A stretch of 64,000 nucleotides of DNA from Octopus sinensis (taxonomy: Eukaryota): the NCBI RefSeq assembly GCF_006345805.1, contig NC_043014.1:16492001-16556000 (forward strand), written 5' to 3'. Position numbers and translations under genes: made by a program. Of this stretch, positions 23,343-25,369 are shown piece by piece; position 1 is the stretch's first letter, and each line of letters starts with the position of its first letter. A model generated the notes under the pieces. That model ran no database searches. It saw only the letters and a list, made by a program, of their open reading frames with translations, and had not been told where the DNA came from.

Positions 23343-25241
23343 GTAATGGAGGCTGGCAAGACGACCCTACCCAAGTGGTTGTATTTCGACGTTGAGACTC
23401 GTACCTTCTCTGGAGTCCCGAAACCAGCAGACATCGCCCAGTATTACATTGAGGTTGTGGCGCAGGCTGAGGACCAAGGAGCTGTTAGTCAGTTCGCCAA
23501 AGACATCTTCTCGATTCATGTGACCAAAGAAAGTTCGAAACCCGCCACAGCGGCGGCAGCAGCAGCAGCAATCAGTGGTTCATCATCAAAGAAGAACGGC
23601 ATGGGTTCAAATTCTCCATCAGTCATCCAATGCATGCCCCAGGAGCCAGAGACAGCATTTACGCTAATTGTTGATGCAGACCTTGATCAACTTCCTCCCC
23701 ACGGCATTGTGGAACTGTTAAAGAAACTGGAGCACAATCTGGAGCTTGTGTCTGAGATGTTTAAGGTCGATCCTGCCACCACTGGCAACAGGCCCATCCC
23801 TCCTGTCCATGCAGTTGCCCCAGACACATCGTCCTCATCCACCCTTGAATCAGGGCCCGGTGACACAAAAATCGCAAAGCACCCCGGGGTGCTTGTCACA
23901 TGGTTGGTTGGTTGTGGCCGAGTGGAGCTGCGGCACATGAACGTTCTACAGAGGGTGGAATCAATTTCAGCAAATGGCACCTTGTCCGAGCTCCTCGGTC
24001 ATGGAGTTGTAGGGTGGCATGTGACAAACAGACAAGTAACCCTGCCTGAGAAGAGAGTAAGGCGTGCAGCCATCATGGCCACCCCGGCTGTCACTGACAT
24101 TGCACCGACGCGCACCCACCTGCATTCGCACAAGACCCACCACCGACATACAGATGGAATGGCCATCAGCATGCCCGAATATTGCAGTCGCGCAAGAAAG
24201 CTAAAACCACGAATAGCACACAGGATTCCTGTACAGGAATTCGAGGTCGGGAAGCGAGCCTACTTCTCTGTGCCATCTGACACGTTCATTGACTGCAAGG
24301 AGCCCAGCGACCGCTTGACGCTGGCATTTTTCCTTAAGCAACTCCCTCCCAACAATTGGCTGCAGCGAGACCCGGCCAATAACAAGAGCATAATTGGGCT
24401 GCCAATGGAAAGCAATGTGGGCATCCTCAACGTGACAGTGGTGGCGATAAACAGTGATGGAAAGTTCAACAACATGGACATCCTCGTGAAGGTTCTGAAG
24501 AACAAGAACCTCAAGAGCAACAAGGTAACCCACAAGATCAAGATGAAGTTCAGTATGTACTACAAGATATTCATGTCAAACCTTGACTCGAGGCTCAATC
24601 TCATTGACAAGATCGGCAAATTGTACGGAGACGCAGATGCGAGCAGCGTCACAGTGCTCGAAATAACAGAGGGGTCCGTTGAGGTGTCGTGGACAAACAA
24701 CACTCTCGTCGGCACAAAATGCCCCGATGATGCTACCAAAGCCCTTTTTGAACGCCTAGTTGATGACAAAAAGCGGGTGAAACGTTCAGCAAGGAAAGCA
24801 ATGAAACCTTTCAAGCTGCAATCGGCCCAAATAATCCCGATGGGAGCTTGTGCTGGGGGCTATATCAACCCAATGCCGAGCACCACAATGGTAGCATCAA
24901 CAACACCAGAACTCAATATCAACCCAATGCCGAGCACCACAATGGTAGCAGCAACAACACCAGAACTCAATATCAACCCAATGACGAGCACCACAATGGT
25001 AGCAGCAACAACACCAGAACTCAAGAAACCACAGTCTGATGATGAGATCGATATTCTTATTTCAATCAATGTCCTTTGTATCACCTACGTGTTCATATTG
25101 CTTCTGGCCTTGCTCATTACTTGCATCCGTTACCTAAAGAGTCGTAGACGAAAGATGTCGCTCTCGTCTGCAGGCGAGGGCACCCAGTTGACCCCGAACC
25201 AGACCGAAGAAGAGGTGGGCATCGCAGAAACGGTGGAGTAA
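23343..25241 (+). CDS. DAG1: Dystroglycan-like gene, second large coding exon (rest of IG1, S6-like domain, furin site, IG2, SEA/NU module, TM, short tail as assembled)
   Basis: Acceptor ttctattctttccAG at 23342, phase 0, giving DIKSFT|VMEAGKTTLPKWL (cf. GDIIK|VSAAGKEALPSWL). Also LIVDADL, GPGD, WLVGC, GVVGWHVTN, KRVRR-AAIMATP, VPSDTFID, ITEG/SVEVSWTNNTL, SDDE, a TM segment and KSRRRK. Spliced ORF is about 785 aa. Confidence 0.93.
   Translation, partial: VMEAGKTTLPKWLYFDVETRTFSGVPKPADIAQYYIEVVAQAEDQGAVSQFAKDIFSIHVTKESSKPATAAAAAAAISGSSSKKNGMGSNSPSVIQCMPQEPETAFTLIVDADLDQLPPHGIVELLKKLEHNLELVSEMFKVDPATTGNRPIPPVHAVAPDTSSSSTLESGPGDTKIAKHPGVLVTWLVGCGRVELRHMNVLQRVESISANGTLSELLGHGVVGWHVTNRQVTLPEKRVRRAAIMATPAVTDIAPTRTHLHSHKTHHRHTDGMAISMPEYCSRARKLKPRIAHRIPVQEFEVGKRAYFSVPSDTFIDCKEPSDRLTLAFFLKQLPPNNWLQRDPANNKSIIGLPMESNVGILNVTVVAINSDGKFNNMDILVKVLKNKNLKSNKVTHKIKMKFSMYYKIFMSNLDSRLNLIDKIGKLYGDADASSVTVLEITEGSVEVSWTNNTLVGTKCPDDATKALFERLVDDKKRVKRSARKAMKPFKLQSAQIIPMGACAGGYINPMPSTTMVASTTPELNINPMPSTTMVAATTPELNINPMTSTTMVAATTPELKKPQSDDEIDILISINVLCITYVFILLLALLITCIRYLKSRRRKMSLSSAGEGTQLTPNQTEEEVGIAETVE
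24862..25023 (+). repeat. Coding minisatellite, 3 x 54 bp (INPMPSTTMVASTTPELN) in the beta-dystroglycan stalk
   Basis: Near-identical units start at 24862, 24916 and 24970. Confidence 0.95.
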
Positions 25242-25369
25242 ACGAACCCATACTCGGCTCGCAACCGTGTGAGCCACCACCTCCTGTCACCGTGTGGCAA
25301 GGCAAGAAACAGCCGCGCCCCCACGTGCAACCCCCCTACACATCACCTCCTCCATATGTGCCTCCATAA
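25148..25369 (+). CDS. DAG1: Out-of-frame canonical dystroglycan cytoplasmic C-terminus (...EPPPPVTVWQGKKQPRPHVQPPYTSPPPYVPP*)
   Basis: Frame open from 25148 to TAA at 25367-25369, shifted -1 relative to the main ORF. It ends in the dystroglycan hallmark PPPYVPP-stop. Confidence 0.8.
   Translation, partial: TKDVALVCRRGHPVDPEPDRRRGGHRRNGGVNEPILGSQPCEPPPPVTVWQGKKQPRPHVQPPYTSPPPYVPP

What the first reader, a model, noticed from the sequence alone, without database searches (positions are those of the whole stretch)
25130..25369. Dystroglycan's dystrophin-binding PPxY tail is encoded out of frame, behind a stop codon
The long ORF ends ...EEEVGIAETVE* at 25241 with no WW-binding motif. The -1 frame (open 25148-25369) reads ...EPILGSQPCEPPPPVTVWQGKKQPRPHVQPPYTSPPPYVPP*, closely matching the canonical PPPPF...RPKN.TPYRSPPPYVPP end. 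Both frames overlap for about 90 nt. Explanations: a 1-nt assembly indel (most parsimonious), a real frameshift allele uncoupling DG from dystrophin, or regulated tail switching by splicing or recoding. A pyrimidine-rich ctctcgtctgcAG at 25173 could act as an acceptor, but I found no good matching donor and no X XXY YYZ slippery site. The usual KKGxPIIFxDEL segment is absent in all three frames.
Basis: partly seen in the sequence, partly recalled or inferred. Interest (0 to 1): 0.8.

Follow-up and report, generated by a model that had tools for sequence, protein, structure and literature searches.

The report
Fossil PPxY tail in dystroglycan duplicate
The out-of-frame dystrophin-binding tail is real, but it is the leftover of an old, fixed one-base deletion in an octopus-specific duplicate of dystroglycan, while the normal dystroglycan gene with an intact tail sits on another chromosome.

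Summary
The long ORF stops at TAA 25239-25241 (...EEEVGIAETVE*), and the -1 frame, open 25148-25369, ends ...SPPPYVPP*.

The window is Octopus sinensis chromosome CM016876.1, gene LOC118767040. This is not the canonical dystroglycan. It is one of four tandem paralogs spaced about 80 kb apart. O. vulgaris carries four matching copies in an independent assembly.

All eight copies share:
- the same 1-nt deletion (CCAGGACC to CCAGACC, window 25202|25203);
- the same 144-nt in-frame deletion that removed the KGAPVIF...PPEY segment;
- the same new stop.

The canonical gene, on another chromosome in both species, keeps the full tail. This excludes an assembly indel.

The stranded tail is decaying. 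Three of eight copies have a TAC-to-TAA nonsense just before PPPY, and one has a P-to-H change. Within-paralog changes there run 8 nonsynonymous to 2 synonymous. No slippery heptamer and no convincing splice pair exist, and the AG at 25173 is private to this copy.

The ectodomain still shows moderate purifying selection (40N:28S, p=0.0013; dN/dS 0.3-0.6). The copies therefore probably encode tail-less, mucin-poor dystroglycans uncoupled from dystrophin. No expression data could be obtained here.

Ordinary gene-family evolution; modest interest.

The parts
5927..6349 (+). Exon 1 of the dystroglycan paralog LOC118767040: start codon, signal peptide and N-terminal region. The donor is ACG|GTATGT.
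   Evidence: tblastn of P0001 residues 1-142 gives 100% identity; the donor was read directly.
6350..23342 (+). A 17-kb intron ending in the acceptor ...TTTTTCTATTCTTTCCAG. It holds a window-specific LINE insertion at about 17520-21545.
   Evidence: The intron and flanks are also similar to the canonical locus, so the duplication happened at the DNA level and is not a retrocopy.
23343..25241 (+). Exon 2 coding sequence (632 codons plus TAA). It contains an Ig-like domain, an alpha-DG N2 domain, the first 128 positions of the DAG1 domain with the conserved EG|SVEVSWTN maturation motif, a TM helix and a 37-residue cytoplasmic stub.
   Evidence: Pfam PF05345, PF18424, PF05454 positions 3-128/290.
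24862..25024 (+). Tandem repeat of 54 nt x 3, encoding INPMPSTTMVAATTPELN (T/S/P-rich, extracellular, juxtamembrane). The paralogs have 2-5 units; the canonical DG has 1.
   Evidence: TRF, 98% matches; unit counts per copy.
25053..25154 (+). Transmembrane segment ILISINVLCITYVFILLLALLITCI (25053-25127), followed by the retained basic juxtamembrane cluster RYLKSRRRK (25128-25154).
   Evidence: Direct reading of the translation, aligned to the canonical ...LLLALLVACILYRKKRKGK.
25173..25178 (+). Junction of the 144-nt (48-codon) in-frame deletion that removed HDAYSGKGAPVIFAEELEDKPTDCQRPLILDDEKPPHPPPEYQHSSSES. It is flanked by GCGA microhomology in the canonical gene.
   Evidence: DNA alignments; gap table (144 nt in all 8 paralogs).
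25202..25203 (+). Site of the 1-nt deletion. The canonical ...AACCAGGACCGA... became ...AACCAGACCGA..., shifting the reading frame by one base.
   Evidence: the same single-column gap occurs in all 8 paralogs and is absent from both canonical genes.
25203..25241 (+). Novel frame-shifted C-terminus TEEEVGIAETVE plus TAA. The TAA is made from the old codons GGA-GTA-AAC.
   Evidence: seven of 8 genomic copies end ...TEEEVG[I/L]A[E/A]TVE*.
25242..25369 (+). Fossil of the ancestral cytoplasmic tail in the old (-1) frame, now 3'UTR: NEPILGSQPCEPPPPVTVWQGKKQPRPHVQPPYTSPPPYVPP*. The first PPY Tyr codon is at 25337-25339, the terminal PPPY at 25346-25357, and the old stop at 25367-25369.
   Evidence: In L004, L005 and L007 position 25339 is A, which turns TAC into TAA.

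Best explanation
**What it is.** The window carries one member (LOC118767040) of a young tandem array of four dystroglycan duplicates on Octopus sinensis chromosome CM016876.1. O. vulgaris carries four matching copies.

**What happened.** Before the array expanded, and before the two species split, the founding duplicate suffered several changes:
- four in-frame deletions of 90, 153 and 9 nt in the mucin-like and central region and 144 nt in the cytoplasmic domain;
- one 1-nt deletion, at window 25202|25203.

The 1-nt deletion moved translation into a frame that ends 12 codons later at TAA 25239-25241. The former C-terminal 42 codons, including the WW-binding PPPY, were left untranslated in the 3'UTR. 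There they are drifting as a molecular fossil.

**Shown here.**
- The deletions are shared by all copies.
- The canonical gene is intact elsewhere.
- The fossil frame is decaying.
- No recoding or splice signals are present.

**Inferred.** The paralogs are still functional genes. They would encode secreted/processed alpha-DG-like plus beta-DG-like proteins with a TM helix and a 37-residue stub. The stub keeps the basic juxtamembrane cluster but has lost every WW/SH3/SH2 motif. These proteins would therefore sit in the membrane without coupling to dystrophin or utrophin.
For: **Identity and paralogs**
- P0001 is 100% identical to the window ORF and is O. sinensis XP_036366874.1.
- The paralog proteins of O. 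sinensis (P0002, P0014) and O. vulgaris (P0011, P0012, P0015) all end ...TEEEVG[IL]A[EA]TVE.
- The canonical DGs (P0019 O. sinensis, P0004 O. vulgaris, P0017 O. bimaculoides) carry the full tail ...KGAPVIFAEEL...PPPEY...NQDRRRGGHRSDGGVNEPILGSQPYEPPPP...RSPPPYVPP.
- They map to other chromosomes.

**Shared lesions**
- A DNA alignment of 10 loci shows the same 144-nt gap and the same 1-nt gap in all 8 paralogs.

**Array layout**
- O. sinensis: 16.27, 16.34, 16.42 and 16.50 Mb.
- O. vulgaris: 22.86-23.24 Mb.

**Decay of the fossil frame**
- TAC>TAA in 3 copies and P>H in one.
- Variable sites within the paralogs are 8 nonsynonymous to 2 synonymous in the old frame, which fits neutrality.
- All 4 fixed paralog-versus-canonical differences there are synonymous.

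**Constraint on the rest of the gene**
- Ectodomain: 40N:28S against a neutral expectation of 77% N (binomial p=0.0013).
- Pairwise dN/dS is 0.27-0.66 among paralogs.
- Seven of 8 exon-2 ORFs are intact to the shared stop.

**Domain content**
- The DAG1 profile is matched over 3-128/290 in the window's exon-2 product (3-127 and 3-129 in paralogs P0012 and P0014), against 3-290/290 in canonical DG.

**Phylogeny**
- Paralogs are monophyletic in 200/200 bootstraps.
- They nest with O. sinensis/O. vulgaris DG, excluding O. bimaculoides DG, in 197/200.
Against: - No transcript, read-level or proteomic data could be reached with these tools, so expression of the paralogs and the exact mRNA 3' end are unverified.
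- dN/dS of 0.3-0.6 rests on few substitutions. Gene conversion among tandem copies may affect it.
- One copy per species shows extra damage or odd annotation. L007 has a private 1-nt deletion. The RefSeq model for L002 is flagged LOW QUALITY. This would also fit a family sliding towards pseudogenisation.
- The final 33 nt (SPPPYVPP*) are invariant in all 10 sequences, but so is the adjacent old 3'UTR.
Confidence: 0.9

Rival explanations
1. Assembly artefact: a single-base indel introduced by long-read sequencing splits one continuous ORF. The real gene would encode a PPxY tail.
For: NCBI's pipeline 'repaired' one sister copy in just this way. P0003 (XP_036366867.1, LOW QUALITY PROTEIN) reads ...GTQLTQPDRRRGG...PPPYVPP.
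Against: - The genomic sequence under P0003 (L002) has the same 1-nt gap. Read as it stands, it gives an intact ORF ending ...ETVE.
- The deletion is identical in 8 diverged copies from two species assembled with different chemistries (PacBio; ONT plus Illumina polishing, PMC10700109).
- The context is a GG dinucleotide, not a homopolymer run.
- The canonical copy in the same assemblies retains GG.
Confidence: 0.02
2. The whole paralog family is dead: unexpressed or non-functional pseudogenes. The truncated ORF would then be as meaningless as the fossil tail.
For: - There are multiple deletions relative to the parent gene.
- One O. vulgaris copy (L007) has a further frameshift.
- Constraint is relaxed compared with canonical DG: dN/dS 0.3-0.6 against 0.05.
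- The TM and stub region shows 18N:3S.
- No literature or expression record was found.
Against: - All large deletions are in frame (90, 153, 9, 144 nt).
- Seven of 8 copies keep a 614-668-codon exon-2 ORF and the same stop.
- The ectodomain N:S ratio is significantly below neutral (p=0.0013).
- The signal peptide, the G|S maturation motif and the TM helix are kept.
- The splice sites are intact.
Confidence: 0.25
3. Regulated tail switching: a short intron, -1 ribosomal frameshifting or RNA editing reconnects the stub to the PPxY tail in some transcripts. One example is the 59-nt GT..AG pair 25215-25273, which would give ...NQTEEE|PPPPVTV...PPPYVPP.
For: - 33 GT..AG pairs of length 3n+2 would formally restore the tail.
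- The GT at 25215 is shared by the paralogs and absent from the canonical gene (C>T).
- The terminal PPPYVPP codons are unchanged in all copies.
Against: - None of the donors resembles GTRAGT.
- The candidate acceptors have 25-65% pyrimidine in the 20 nt before the AG, whereas the gene's genuine acceptor is preceded by ...CCTCCTTTTTCTATTCTTTCCAG (sequence).
- There is no X_XXY_YYZ heptamer in frame 0 across the overlap.
- Three of 8 copies have a stop in the old frame before PPPY, and one has lost the first PPY.
- The substitution pattern in the old frame is neutral.
- A-to-I editing cannot change the frame (established knowledge).
Confidence: 0.03

Closest known systems
Canonical dystroglycan (DAG1) of octopus: O. 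sinensis XP_029652175.1, O. vulgaris CAI9744143.1, O. bimaculoides XP_014780592.1
   Same: - Same two-exon core structure with the intron in the same place.
- Same Ig-like, alpha-DG N2 and IG2_MAT_NU/DAG1 domains.
- Same EG|SVEVSWTN maturation motif, TM helix and basic juxtamembrane cluster.
- About 90-94% DNA identity, including intron and flanks.
   Different: - The paralog lacks 30+51+3 residues of the mucin-like and central region.
- It lacks 48 residues of the cytoplasmic domain (KGAPVIF...PPPEY).
- Through the frameshift it also lacks the whole dystrophin-binding end.
- It has 2-5 copies of an 18-residue T/S/P-rich repeat where the parent has one.
Dystroglycan gene duplicates in teleost fish and lamprey, and DGs that lack the dystrophin-binding site (Trichoplax), as described by Adams and Brancaccio 2015 (PMC4582122)
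   Same: These are further cases of DG gene duplication, and of a DG whose cytoplasmic region lacks the dystrophin-binding motif.
   Different: - The fish duplicates come from whole-genome duplication and keep the tail.
- The octopus copies are a local tandem array restricted, as far as seen here, to the O. vulgaris/O. sinensis lineage.
- They lost the tail by an identifiable frameshift whose fossil is still readable.
- That paper lists a single O. vulgaris DG and no paralogs.
Engineered beta-dystroglycan lacking the cytoplasmic domain, and the motif map of the DG tail (Moore and Winder 2010, PMC2834674)
   Same: The review places two interaction hotspots in the tail. One is the basic juxtamembrane cluster (ERM/rapsyn/ERK/NLS). 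The other is the extreme C-terminal PPxY (WW/SH2/SH3). The octopus paralog keeps the first and has lost the second, like a natural C-terminal truncation.
   Different: This is a natural, fixed and multi-copy truncation. No functional data exist for it. The statement that such truncations retain partial function in mice rests on my own recollection and was not checked here.
Programmed -1 ribosomal frameshift cassettes
   Same: Two overlapping open frames, with the conserved product lying in the -1 frame.
   Different: - No slippery heptamer.
- The downstream frame is not conserved: nonsense in 3 of 8 copies.
- The frame offset is explained by a datable deletion.

Membership tests
Dystroglycan (DAG1) family | N-terminal Ig-like domain plus alpha-DG N-terminal domain 2 (S6-like) | tested here: met
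   PF05345 He_PIG E=4.7e-9 and PF18424 a_DG1_N2 E=6.8e-14 on the exon-2 product, both above the gathering score.
Dystroglycan (DAG1) family | IG2_MAT_NU module with the alpha/beta maturation site (G|S) | tested here: met
   PF05454 DAG1 positions 3-128, E=9.6e-19. The motif EITEG|SVEVSWTNN is identical to canonical octopus DG. Cleavage itself was not tested.
Dystroglycan (DAG1) family | Single TM helix followed by a basic juxtamembrane cluster | tested here: met
   ILISINVLCITYVFILLLALLITCI followed by RYLKSRRRK aligns to the canonical LLLALLVACILYRKKRKGK. This was judged by reading the sequence; no TM predictor was run.
Dystroglycan (DAG1) family | Mucin-like central region | tested here: inconclusive
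   Shared in-frame deletions of 90 and 153 nt remove 81 residues of this region. A new T/S/P-rich 18-residue repeat (2-5 units) lies next to the membrane. Glycosylation is not testable here.
Dystroglycan (DAG1) family | Cytoplasmic tail ending in a WW-binding PPxY, in frame with the rest of the protein | tested here: not met
   The encoded protein ends TEEEVGIAETVE*. The DAG1 profile is matched only to position 128 of 290, against 290/290 in canonical P0019. PPPY is present only in the -1 frame after the stop.
Programmed -1 ribosomal frameshifting site | Slippery heptamer X_XXY_YYZ in the zero frame within the overlap | tested here: not met
   A scan of 25146-25240 found none.
Programmed -1 ribosomal frameshifting site | Downstream frame kept open and under purifying selection in relatives | tested here: not met
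   TAC>TAA in L004, L005 and L007; 8N:2S within paralogs.
Alternative 3' exon or retained short intron restoring the tail | Consensus donor and pyrimidine-rich acceptor, conserved among copies, with length 3n+2 | tested here: not met
   33 formal GT..AG pairs exist but none has consensus signals. The AG at 25173 is private to this copy. RNA evidence is not testable here.
Processed (retro-)pseudogene | Loss of introns, with similarity ending at the transcript boundaries | tested here: not met
   The 17-kb intron is retained with GT..AG sites. Similarity to sister copies and to the canonical locus runs through the intron and flanks.
Non-processed pseudogene | Neutral substitution pattern and ORF disruption across the gene | tested here: inconclusive
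   The ectodomain shows 40N:28S, p=0.0013 against neutrality, and 7 of 8 ORFs are intact. However, dN/dS is 0.3-0.6, one copy is further frameshifted, and no expression data exist.

The most novel reading that the evidence does not exclude
The four-copy tandem array is an expressed innovation of the O. vulgaris/O. sinensis lineage. On this reading it encodes membrane-anchored dystroglycans with three properties:
- they keep the matrix-facing domains and the ERM-type juxtamembrane cluster;
- they have shed most of the mucin region and all dystrophin/utrophin-binding motifs;
- they carry a copy-number-variable O-glycosylation-like repeat.

They would act as dystrophin-uncoupled receptors, or as dominant-negative modulators of the canonical DG complex. 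Much less likely, an unconventional 59-nt splice (25215-25273) could still add the PPxY tail in the five copies that lack the nonsense.
Probability: 0.4. Interest if true: 0.45.

Novelty: new member of a known kind. Interest (0 to 1): 0.3.

Why it matters
**For genome annotation.**
- An out-of-frame 'canonical' C-terminus need not be an assembly error. RefSeq itself force-repaired one of the four copies (LOW QUALITY PROTEIN XP_036366867.1) into a tail that the genome does not encode.
- Anyone counting 'dystroglycan' in octopus should separate the one canonical gene from the four tail-less duplicates.

**For dystroglycan biology.** If the paralogs are expressed, they are a natural experiment: extracellular DG functions separated from dystrophin coupling.

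Otherwise this is routine post-duplication decay.

Tried and rejected
- **Short-query protein search for transcript-derived fragments.** I searched with only the TM, stub and fossil tail (123 aa), hoping to find fragments from Logan assemblies. Eleven candidates came back and none was significant, not even the self hit, so this reflects a limit of the word index and not biology.
- **Expression evidence.**
  - No Logan contig carries any of the paralog proteins. Every protein looked up maps to one NCBI genome contig only.
  - A full-text search for the LOC/XP/UniProt identifiers found 0 papers.
  - The supplements of the O. sinensis gonad transcriptome paper held no hit.
- **Literature on 'dystroglycan' plus 'octopus'.** 17 papers, none describing paralogs.
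- **First bootstrap script.** It timed out and was redone with a faster distance routine.
- **dS comparison among orthologs.** The canonical orthologs differ more (dS 0.05) than the paralog orthologs (0.006-0.009). I therefore give no absolute date for the duplication.
- **Considered and rejected.**
  - Stop-codon editing (UAA to UGG) would only extend frame 0 and cannot reach the PPxY frame.
  - A retrocopy origin is excluded because the intron is retained.
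Full report
**1. The observation**

- The 654-codon mechanical ORF 23277-25241 ends ...TPNQTEEEVGIAETVE with TAA at 25239-25241.
- The -1 frame is open from 25148 (after TAG 25145-25147) to TAA 25367-25369. It reads ...DRRRGGHRRNGGVNEPILGSQPCEPPPPVTVWQGKKQPRPHVQPPYTSPPPYVPP*.
- The two frames are open together for 91 nt.
- No KGxPxIF segment exists in any frame.

**2. What the gene is**

A protein search with the ORF plus the out-of-frame tail returned 10 hits. 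The best hit, at 100% identity, is Octopus sinensis XP_036366874.1 (LOC118767040, 773 aa), located on the 55.35-Mb chromosome CM016876.1. The window is therefore octopus DNA.

The gene has two coding exons:
- exon 1, 5927-6349, with donor GTATGT;
- exon 2, 23343-25241, with acceptor ...TTTCCAG.

Pfam finds He_PIG, a_DG1_N2 and DAG1 on the exon-2 product. The DAG1 profile is matched only over positions 3-128 of 290. The canonical O. sinensis dystroglycan matches 3-290.

**3. It is a paralog, not the dystroglycan gene**

Cluster look-ups and sequence retrieval show two kinds of octopus dystroglycan.

*(a) Canonical genes.*
- They are O. sinensis XP_029652175.1 on CM016885.1, O. vulgaris CAI9744143.1 on OX597842.1, and O. 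bimaculoides XP_014780592.1.
- All carry the full cytoplasmic domain: ...YRKKRKGKMSLSSAGEHDAYSGKGAPVIFAEELEDKPTDCQRPLILDDEKPPHPPPEYQHSSSESTQSTPNQDRRRGGHRSDGGVNEPILGSQPYEPPPPVTASQGKKQPRPHVQPPYRSPPPYVPP.

*(b) Shorter proteins that end ...TEEEVG[I/L]A[E/A]TVE.*
- Four genes lie on O. sinensis CM016876.1 at 16.27, 16.34, 16.42 and 16.50 Mb. The last of these is the window.
- Four genes lie on O. vulgaris OX597833.1 at 22.86, 22.94, 23.06 and 23.22 Mb.

Similarity between the copies, and to the canonical locus, runs through the intron and the flanks. The family therefore arose by segmental DNA duplication, not by retroposition.

**4. The lesions**

I aligned exon-2 DNA from all ten loci. Relative to both canonical genes, every one of the eight paralogs carries the same changes.
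- The same in-frame deletions of 90, 153 and 9 nt in the mucin-like and central region.
- The same 144-nt in-frame deletion in the cytoplasmic domain.
  - Its junction is at window about 25173-25178, between GCGA microhomologies.
  - It removes HDAYSGKGAPVIF...PPPEYQHSSSES.
- The same single-base deletion, CCAGGACC to CCAGACC, at window 25202|25203.

The single-base loss turns ...NQ DRRRGGHR... into ...NQ TEEEVGIAETVE*. The new TAA is built from the old codons GGA GTA AAC.

**5. Not an assembly error**

- The eight copies are diverged from one another. Exon-2 DNA identity to the window copy is about 94-98%, and synonymous divergence among non-orthologous copies is about 0.02-0.05.
- They come from two species whose genomes were built independently. 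O. sinensis used PacBio and Hi-C. O. vulgaris used ONT polished with Illumina (PMC10700109).
- The deleted base lies in a GG dinucleotide, not a homopolymer run.
- The canonical gene in the same two assemblies keeps GG in an otherwise identical context.

The deletion therefore predates both the expansion of the array and the species split. That paper, citing Amor et al. 2019, puts the split at about 2.5 My.

One detail is instructive. RefSeq's 'LOW QUALITY PROTEIN' XP_036366867.1 (P0003) shows a restored PPPYVPP tail. Yet the genomic DNA beneath it (L002) has the same 1-nt gap, and read as it stands it gives an intact 668-codon exon-2 ORF ending ...ETVE.

**6. Is the stranded tail still used?**

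The evidence says no.
- In the old frame, three copies (L004, L005, L007) have TAC to TAA at the position equivalent to 25339. This truncates the old frame just before RSPPPYVPP.
- L008 has P to H in the first PPY.
- Among the paralogs, variable sites in 25242-25369 are 8 nonsynonymous (one nonsense) to 2 synonymous in the old frame. That is indistinguishable from neutrality.
- The four fixed paralog-versus-canonical differences there are all synonymous. This is expected if they arose on the constrained canonical branch, or before the frameshift.
- There is no X_XXY_YYZ heptamer in the zero frame across the overlap.
- Thirty-three GT..AG pairs of length 3n+2 would formally rejoin the frames, including a 59-nt pair at 25215-25273. 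None has a consensus donor, and the 20 nt before the AG are only 25-65% pyrimidine. The gene's genuine acceptor is preceded by ...CCTCCTTTTTCTATTCTTTCCAG.
All other copies and the canonical gene read GCCGG.
- The last 33 nt of the old ORF are invariant, but so is the adjacent old 3'UTR. That invariance reflects youth, not coding constraint.

**7. Are the paralogs alive?**

- Seven of eight exon-2 ORFs (614-668 codons) run uninterrupted to the shared stop. Only O. vulgaris L007 has a further private 1-nt deletion.
- Pairwise Nei-Gojobori dN/dS over 499 ectodomain codons:

| Comparison | dN/dS |
|---|---|
| Between paralogs | 0.27-0.66 |
| Paralog versus canonical | about 0.2 |
| Between the two canonical orthologs | 0.05 |

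- Within the paralogs, ectodomain variable sites split 40N:28S against a neutral expectation of 77% N (binomial p=0.0013).
- The TM and stub segment is much less constrained (18N:3S). The window copy sits on the longest branch of the family.
- The signal peptide, the EG|S maturation motif, the TM helix and the basic juxtamembrane cluster are all retained. According to the motif map in PMC2834674, that cluster is the ERM/rapsyn/ERK/NLS hotspot.

I infer, with moderate confidence, that the copies encode tail-less, mucin-poor dystroglycans that cannot engage dystrophin-type WW domains. A family on its way to pseudogenisation remains a serious alternative (about 0.25). No transcript or peptide evidence was obtainable.

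**8. Age and distribution**

In a neighbour-joining tree of 530 ungapped protein columns:
- the paralogs are monophyletic in 200 of 200 bootstraps;
- they group with O. sinensis/O. vulgaris DG, excluding O. bimaculoides DG, in 197 of 200.

This suggests an origin after the O. bimaculoides lineage split off.

Paralog-canonical dS (0.15-0.18) is several-fold larger than ortholog dS (0.006-0.05). Because the ortholog values are heterogeneous, I give no absolute date. Whether other octopods carry the array could not be tested, because no eukaryotic genome collection is searchable here.

**9. Comparison with what is known**

- Adams and Brancaccio 2015 (PMC4582122) list one O. vulgaris DG.
- They describe DG gene duplicates only in teleosts and lamprey.
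- They describe loss of the dystrophin-binding site only in Trichoplax.
- No paper in the library mentions the octopus paralogs or their accession numbers.
- The gene models themselves are public: RefSeq 'uncharacterized protein' or 'dystroglycan 1-like', and UniProt 'Dystroglycan 1'.

The window gene meets the extracellular and TM criteria of the DG family but fails the in-frame PPxY criterion. It is best filed as a truncated DG paralog.

**10. Verdict**

- The 'assembly indel' reading is refuted.
- The 'real frameshift' reading is right, but it applies to a duplicated gene family and not to the organism's dystroglycan.
- The 'tail switching' reading is unsupported.

This is ordinary post-duplication evolution with an unusually legible fossil. 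Interest is modest: 0.3 overall, and about 0.45 if the paralogs prove to be expressed, dystrophin-uncoupled receptors.

Noticed in passing
window 17520-21545 (ORF 17754-20450, + strand): An uninterrupted 898-codon ORF with a reverse transcriptase domain (RVT_1 E=1.3e-26; zf-RVT weak) sits inside the paralog's intron. The roughly 4-kb block is missing from the sister copies L001, L002, L004 and L006, whose alignments jump from about 17500 to about 21550. It looks like a recent, possibly still competent, non-LTR retrotransposon insertion private to this copy.
   Followed up: partly
window 24862-25024; equivalent region of L001-L008: A 54-nt tandem repeat encodes an 18-residue T/S/P-rich unit (INPMPSTTMVAATTPELN) just outside the membrane. 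It varies from 2 to 5 units among the eight paralogs, while the canonical DG has a single unit. Copy number differs even between orthologous pairs.
   Followed up: partly
L002 30150-30580 (O. sinensis CM016876.1, sister copy): RefSeq XP_036366867.1 ('LOW QUALITY PROTEIN: dystroglycan-like') shows a restored PPPYVPP tail and a frame-shifted stretch through the repeat region. The underlying genome has the same 1-nt deletion and reads an intact ORF ending ...ETVE. The model was edited towards the canonical protein and misrepresents the locus.
   Followed up: yes
window 25020-25202: The window copy has a run of private amino-acid changes in and around the TM helix (EIDILISINVLCITYVFI versus ENVILISTIVLDVTIVSI in its sisters). 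It sits on the longest branch of the family. Family-wide this segment shows 18 nonsynonymous to 3 synonymous variable sites.
   Followed up: partly
L007 about 17640 (O. vulgaris OX597833.1, CAI9737485.1): One O. vulgaris copy has an additional private 1-nt deletion in the juxtamembrane codons (GAGAGG-AAGATG). This throws the stub into the third frame (...RCRSRLPARAPSRPRPRPKKRW...). It is either a genuinely dead copy or an ONT error.
   Followed up: partly
window 5927-6349 versus P0017/P0019 N-termini: Exon 1 of the paralogs (…FNMERDVGAPPPAPVAASMQLKLND…) resembles the N-terminus of the O. bimaculoides DG model (MFNVERDVGAPPVAPAASMQLKLND…) more than the corresponding part of the canonical O. sinensis/O. 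vulgaris models. This hints at alternative first exons or mis-modelled 5' ends in the canonical genes.
   Followed up: no
window 31779-33835 (-), 35260-36357, 51106-52977 (-): Further fragmented endonuclease and reverse-transcriptase ORFs (Exo_endo_phos_2 and RVT_1 weak hits), i.e. decayed LINEs downstream of the gene. Two long ORFs have no Pfam hit: 38440-39537 (-, 365 aa, N/S-rich) and 57686-58771 (-, 361 aa, S/H/E-rich).
   Followed up: partly
window 25380-26300, also 2990-3800, 28090-28800, 33900-35300, 36370-36900: Long (TA/TATG/CATA)n-type microsatellite tracts begin immediately after the old stop codon and recur throughout the window. They generate many spurious Y/I/C/H-rich ORFs on both strands.
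   Followed up: no
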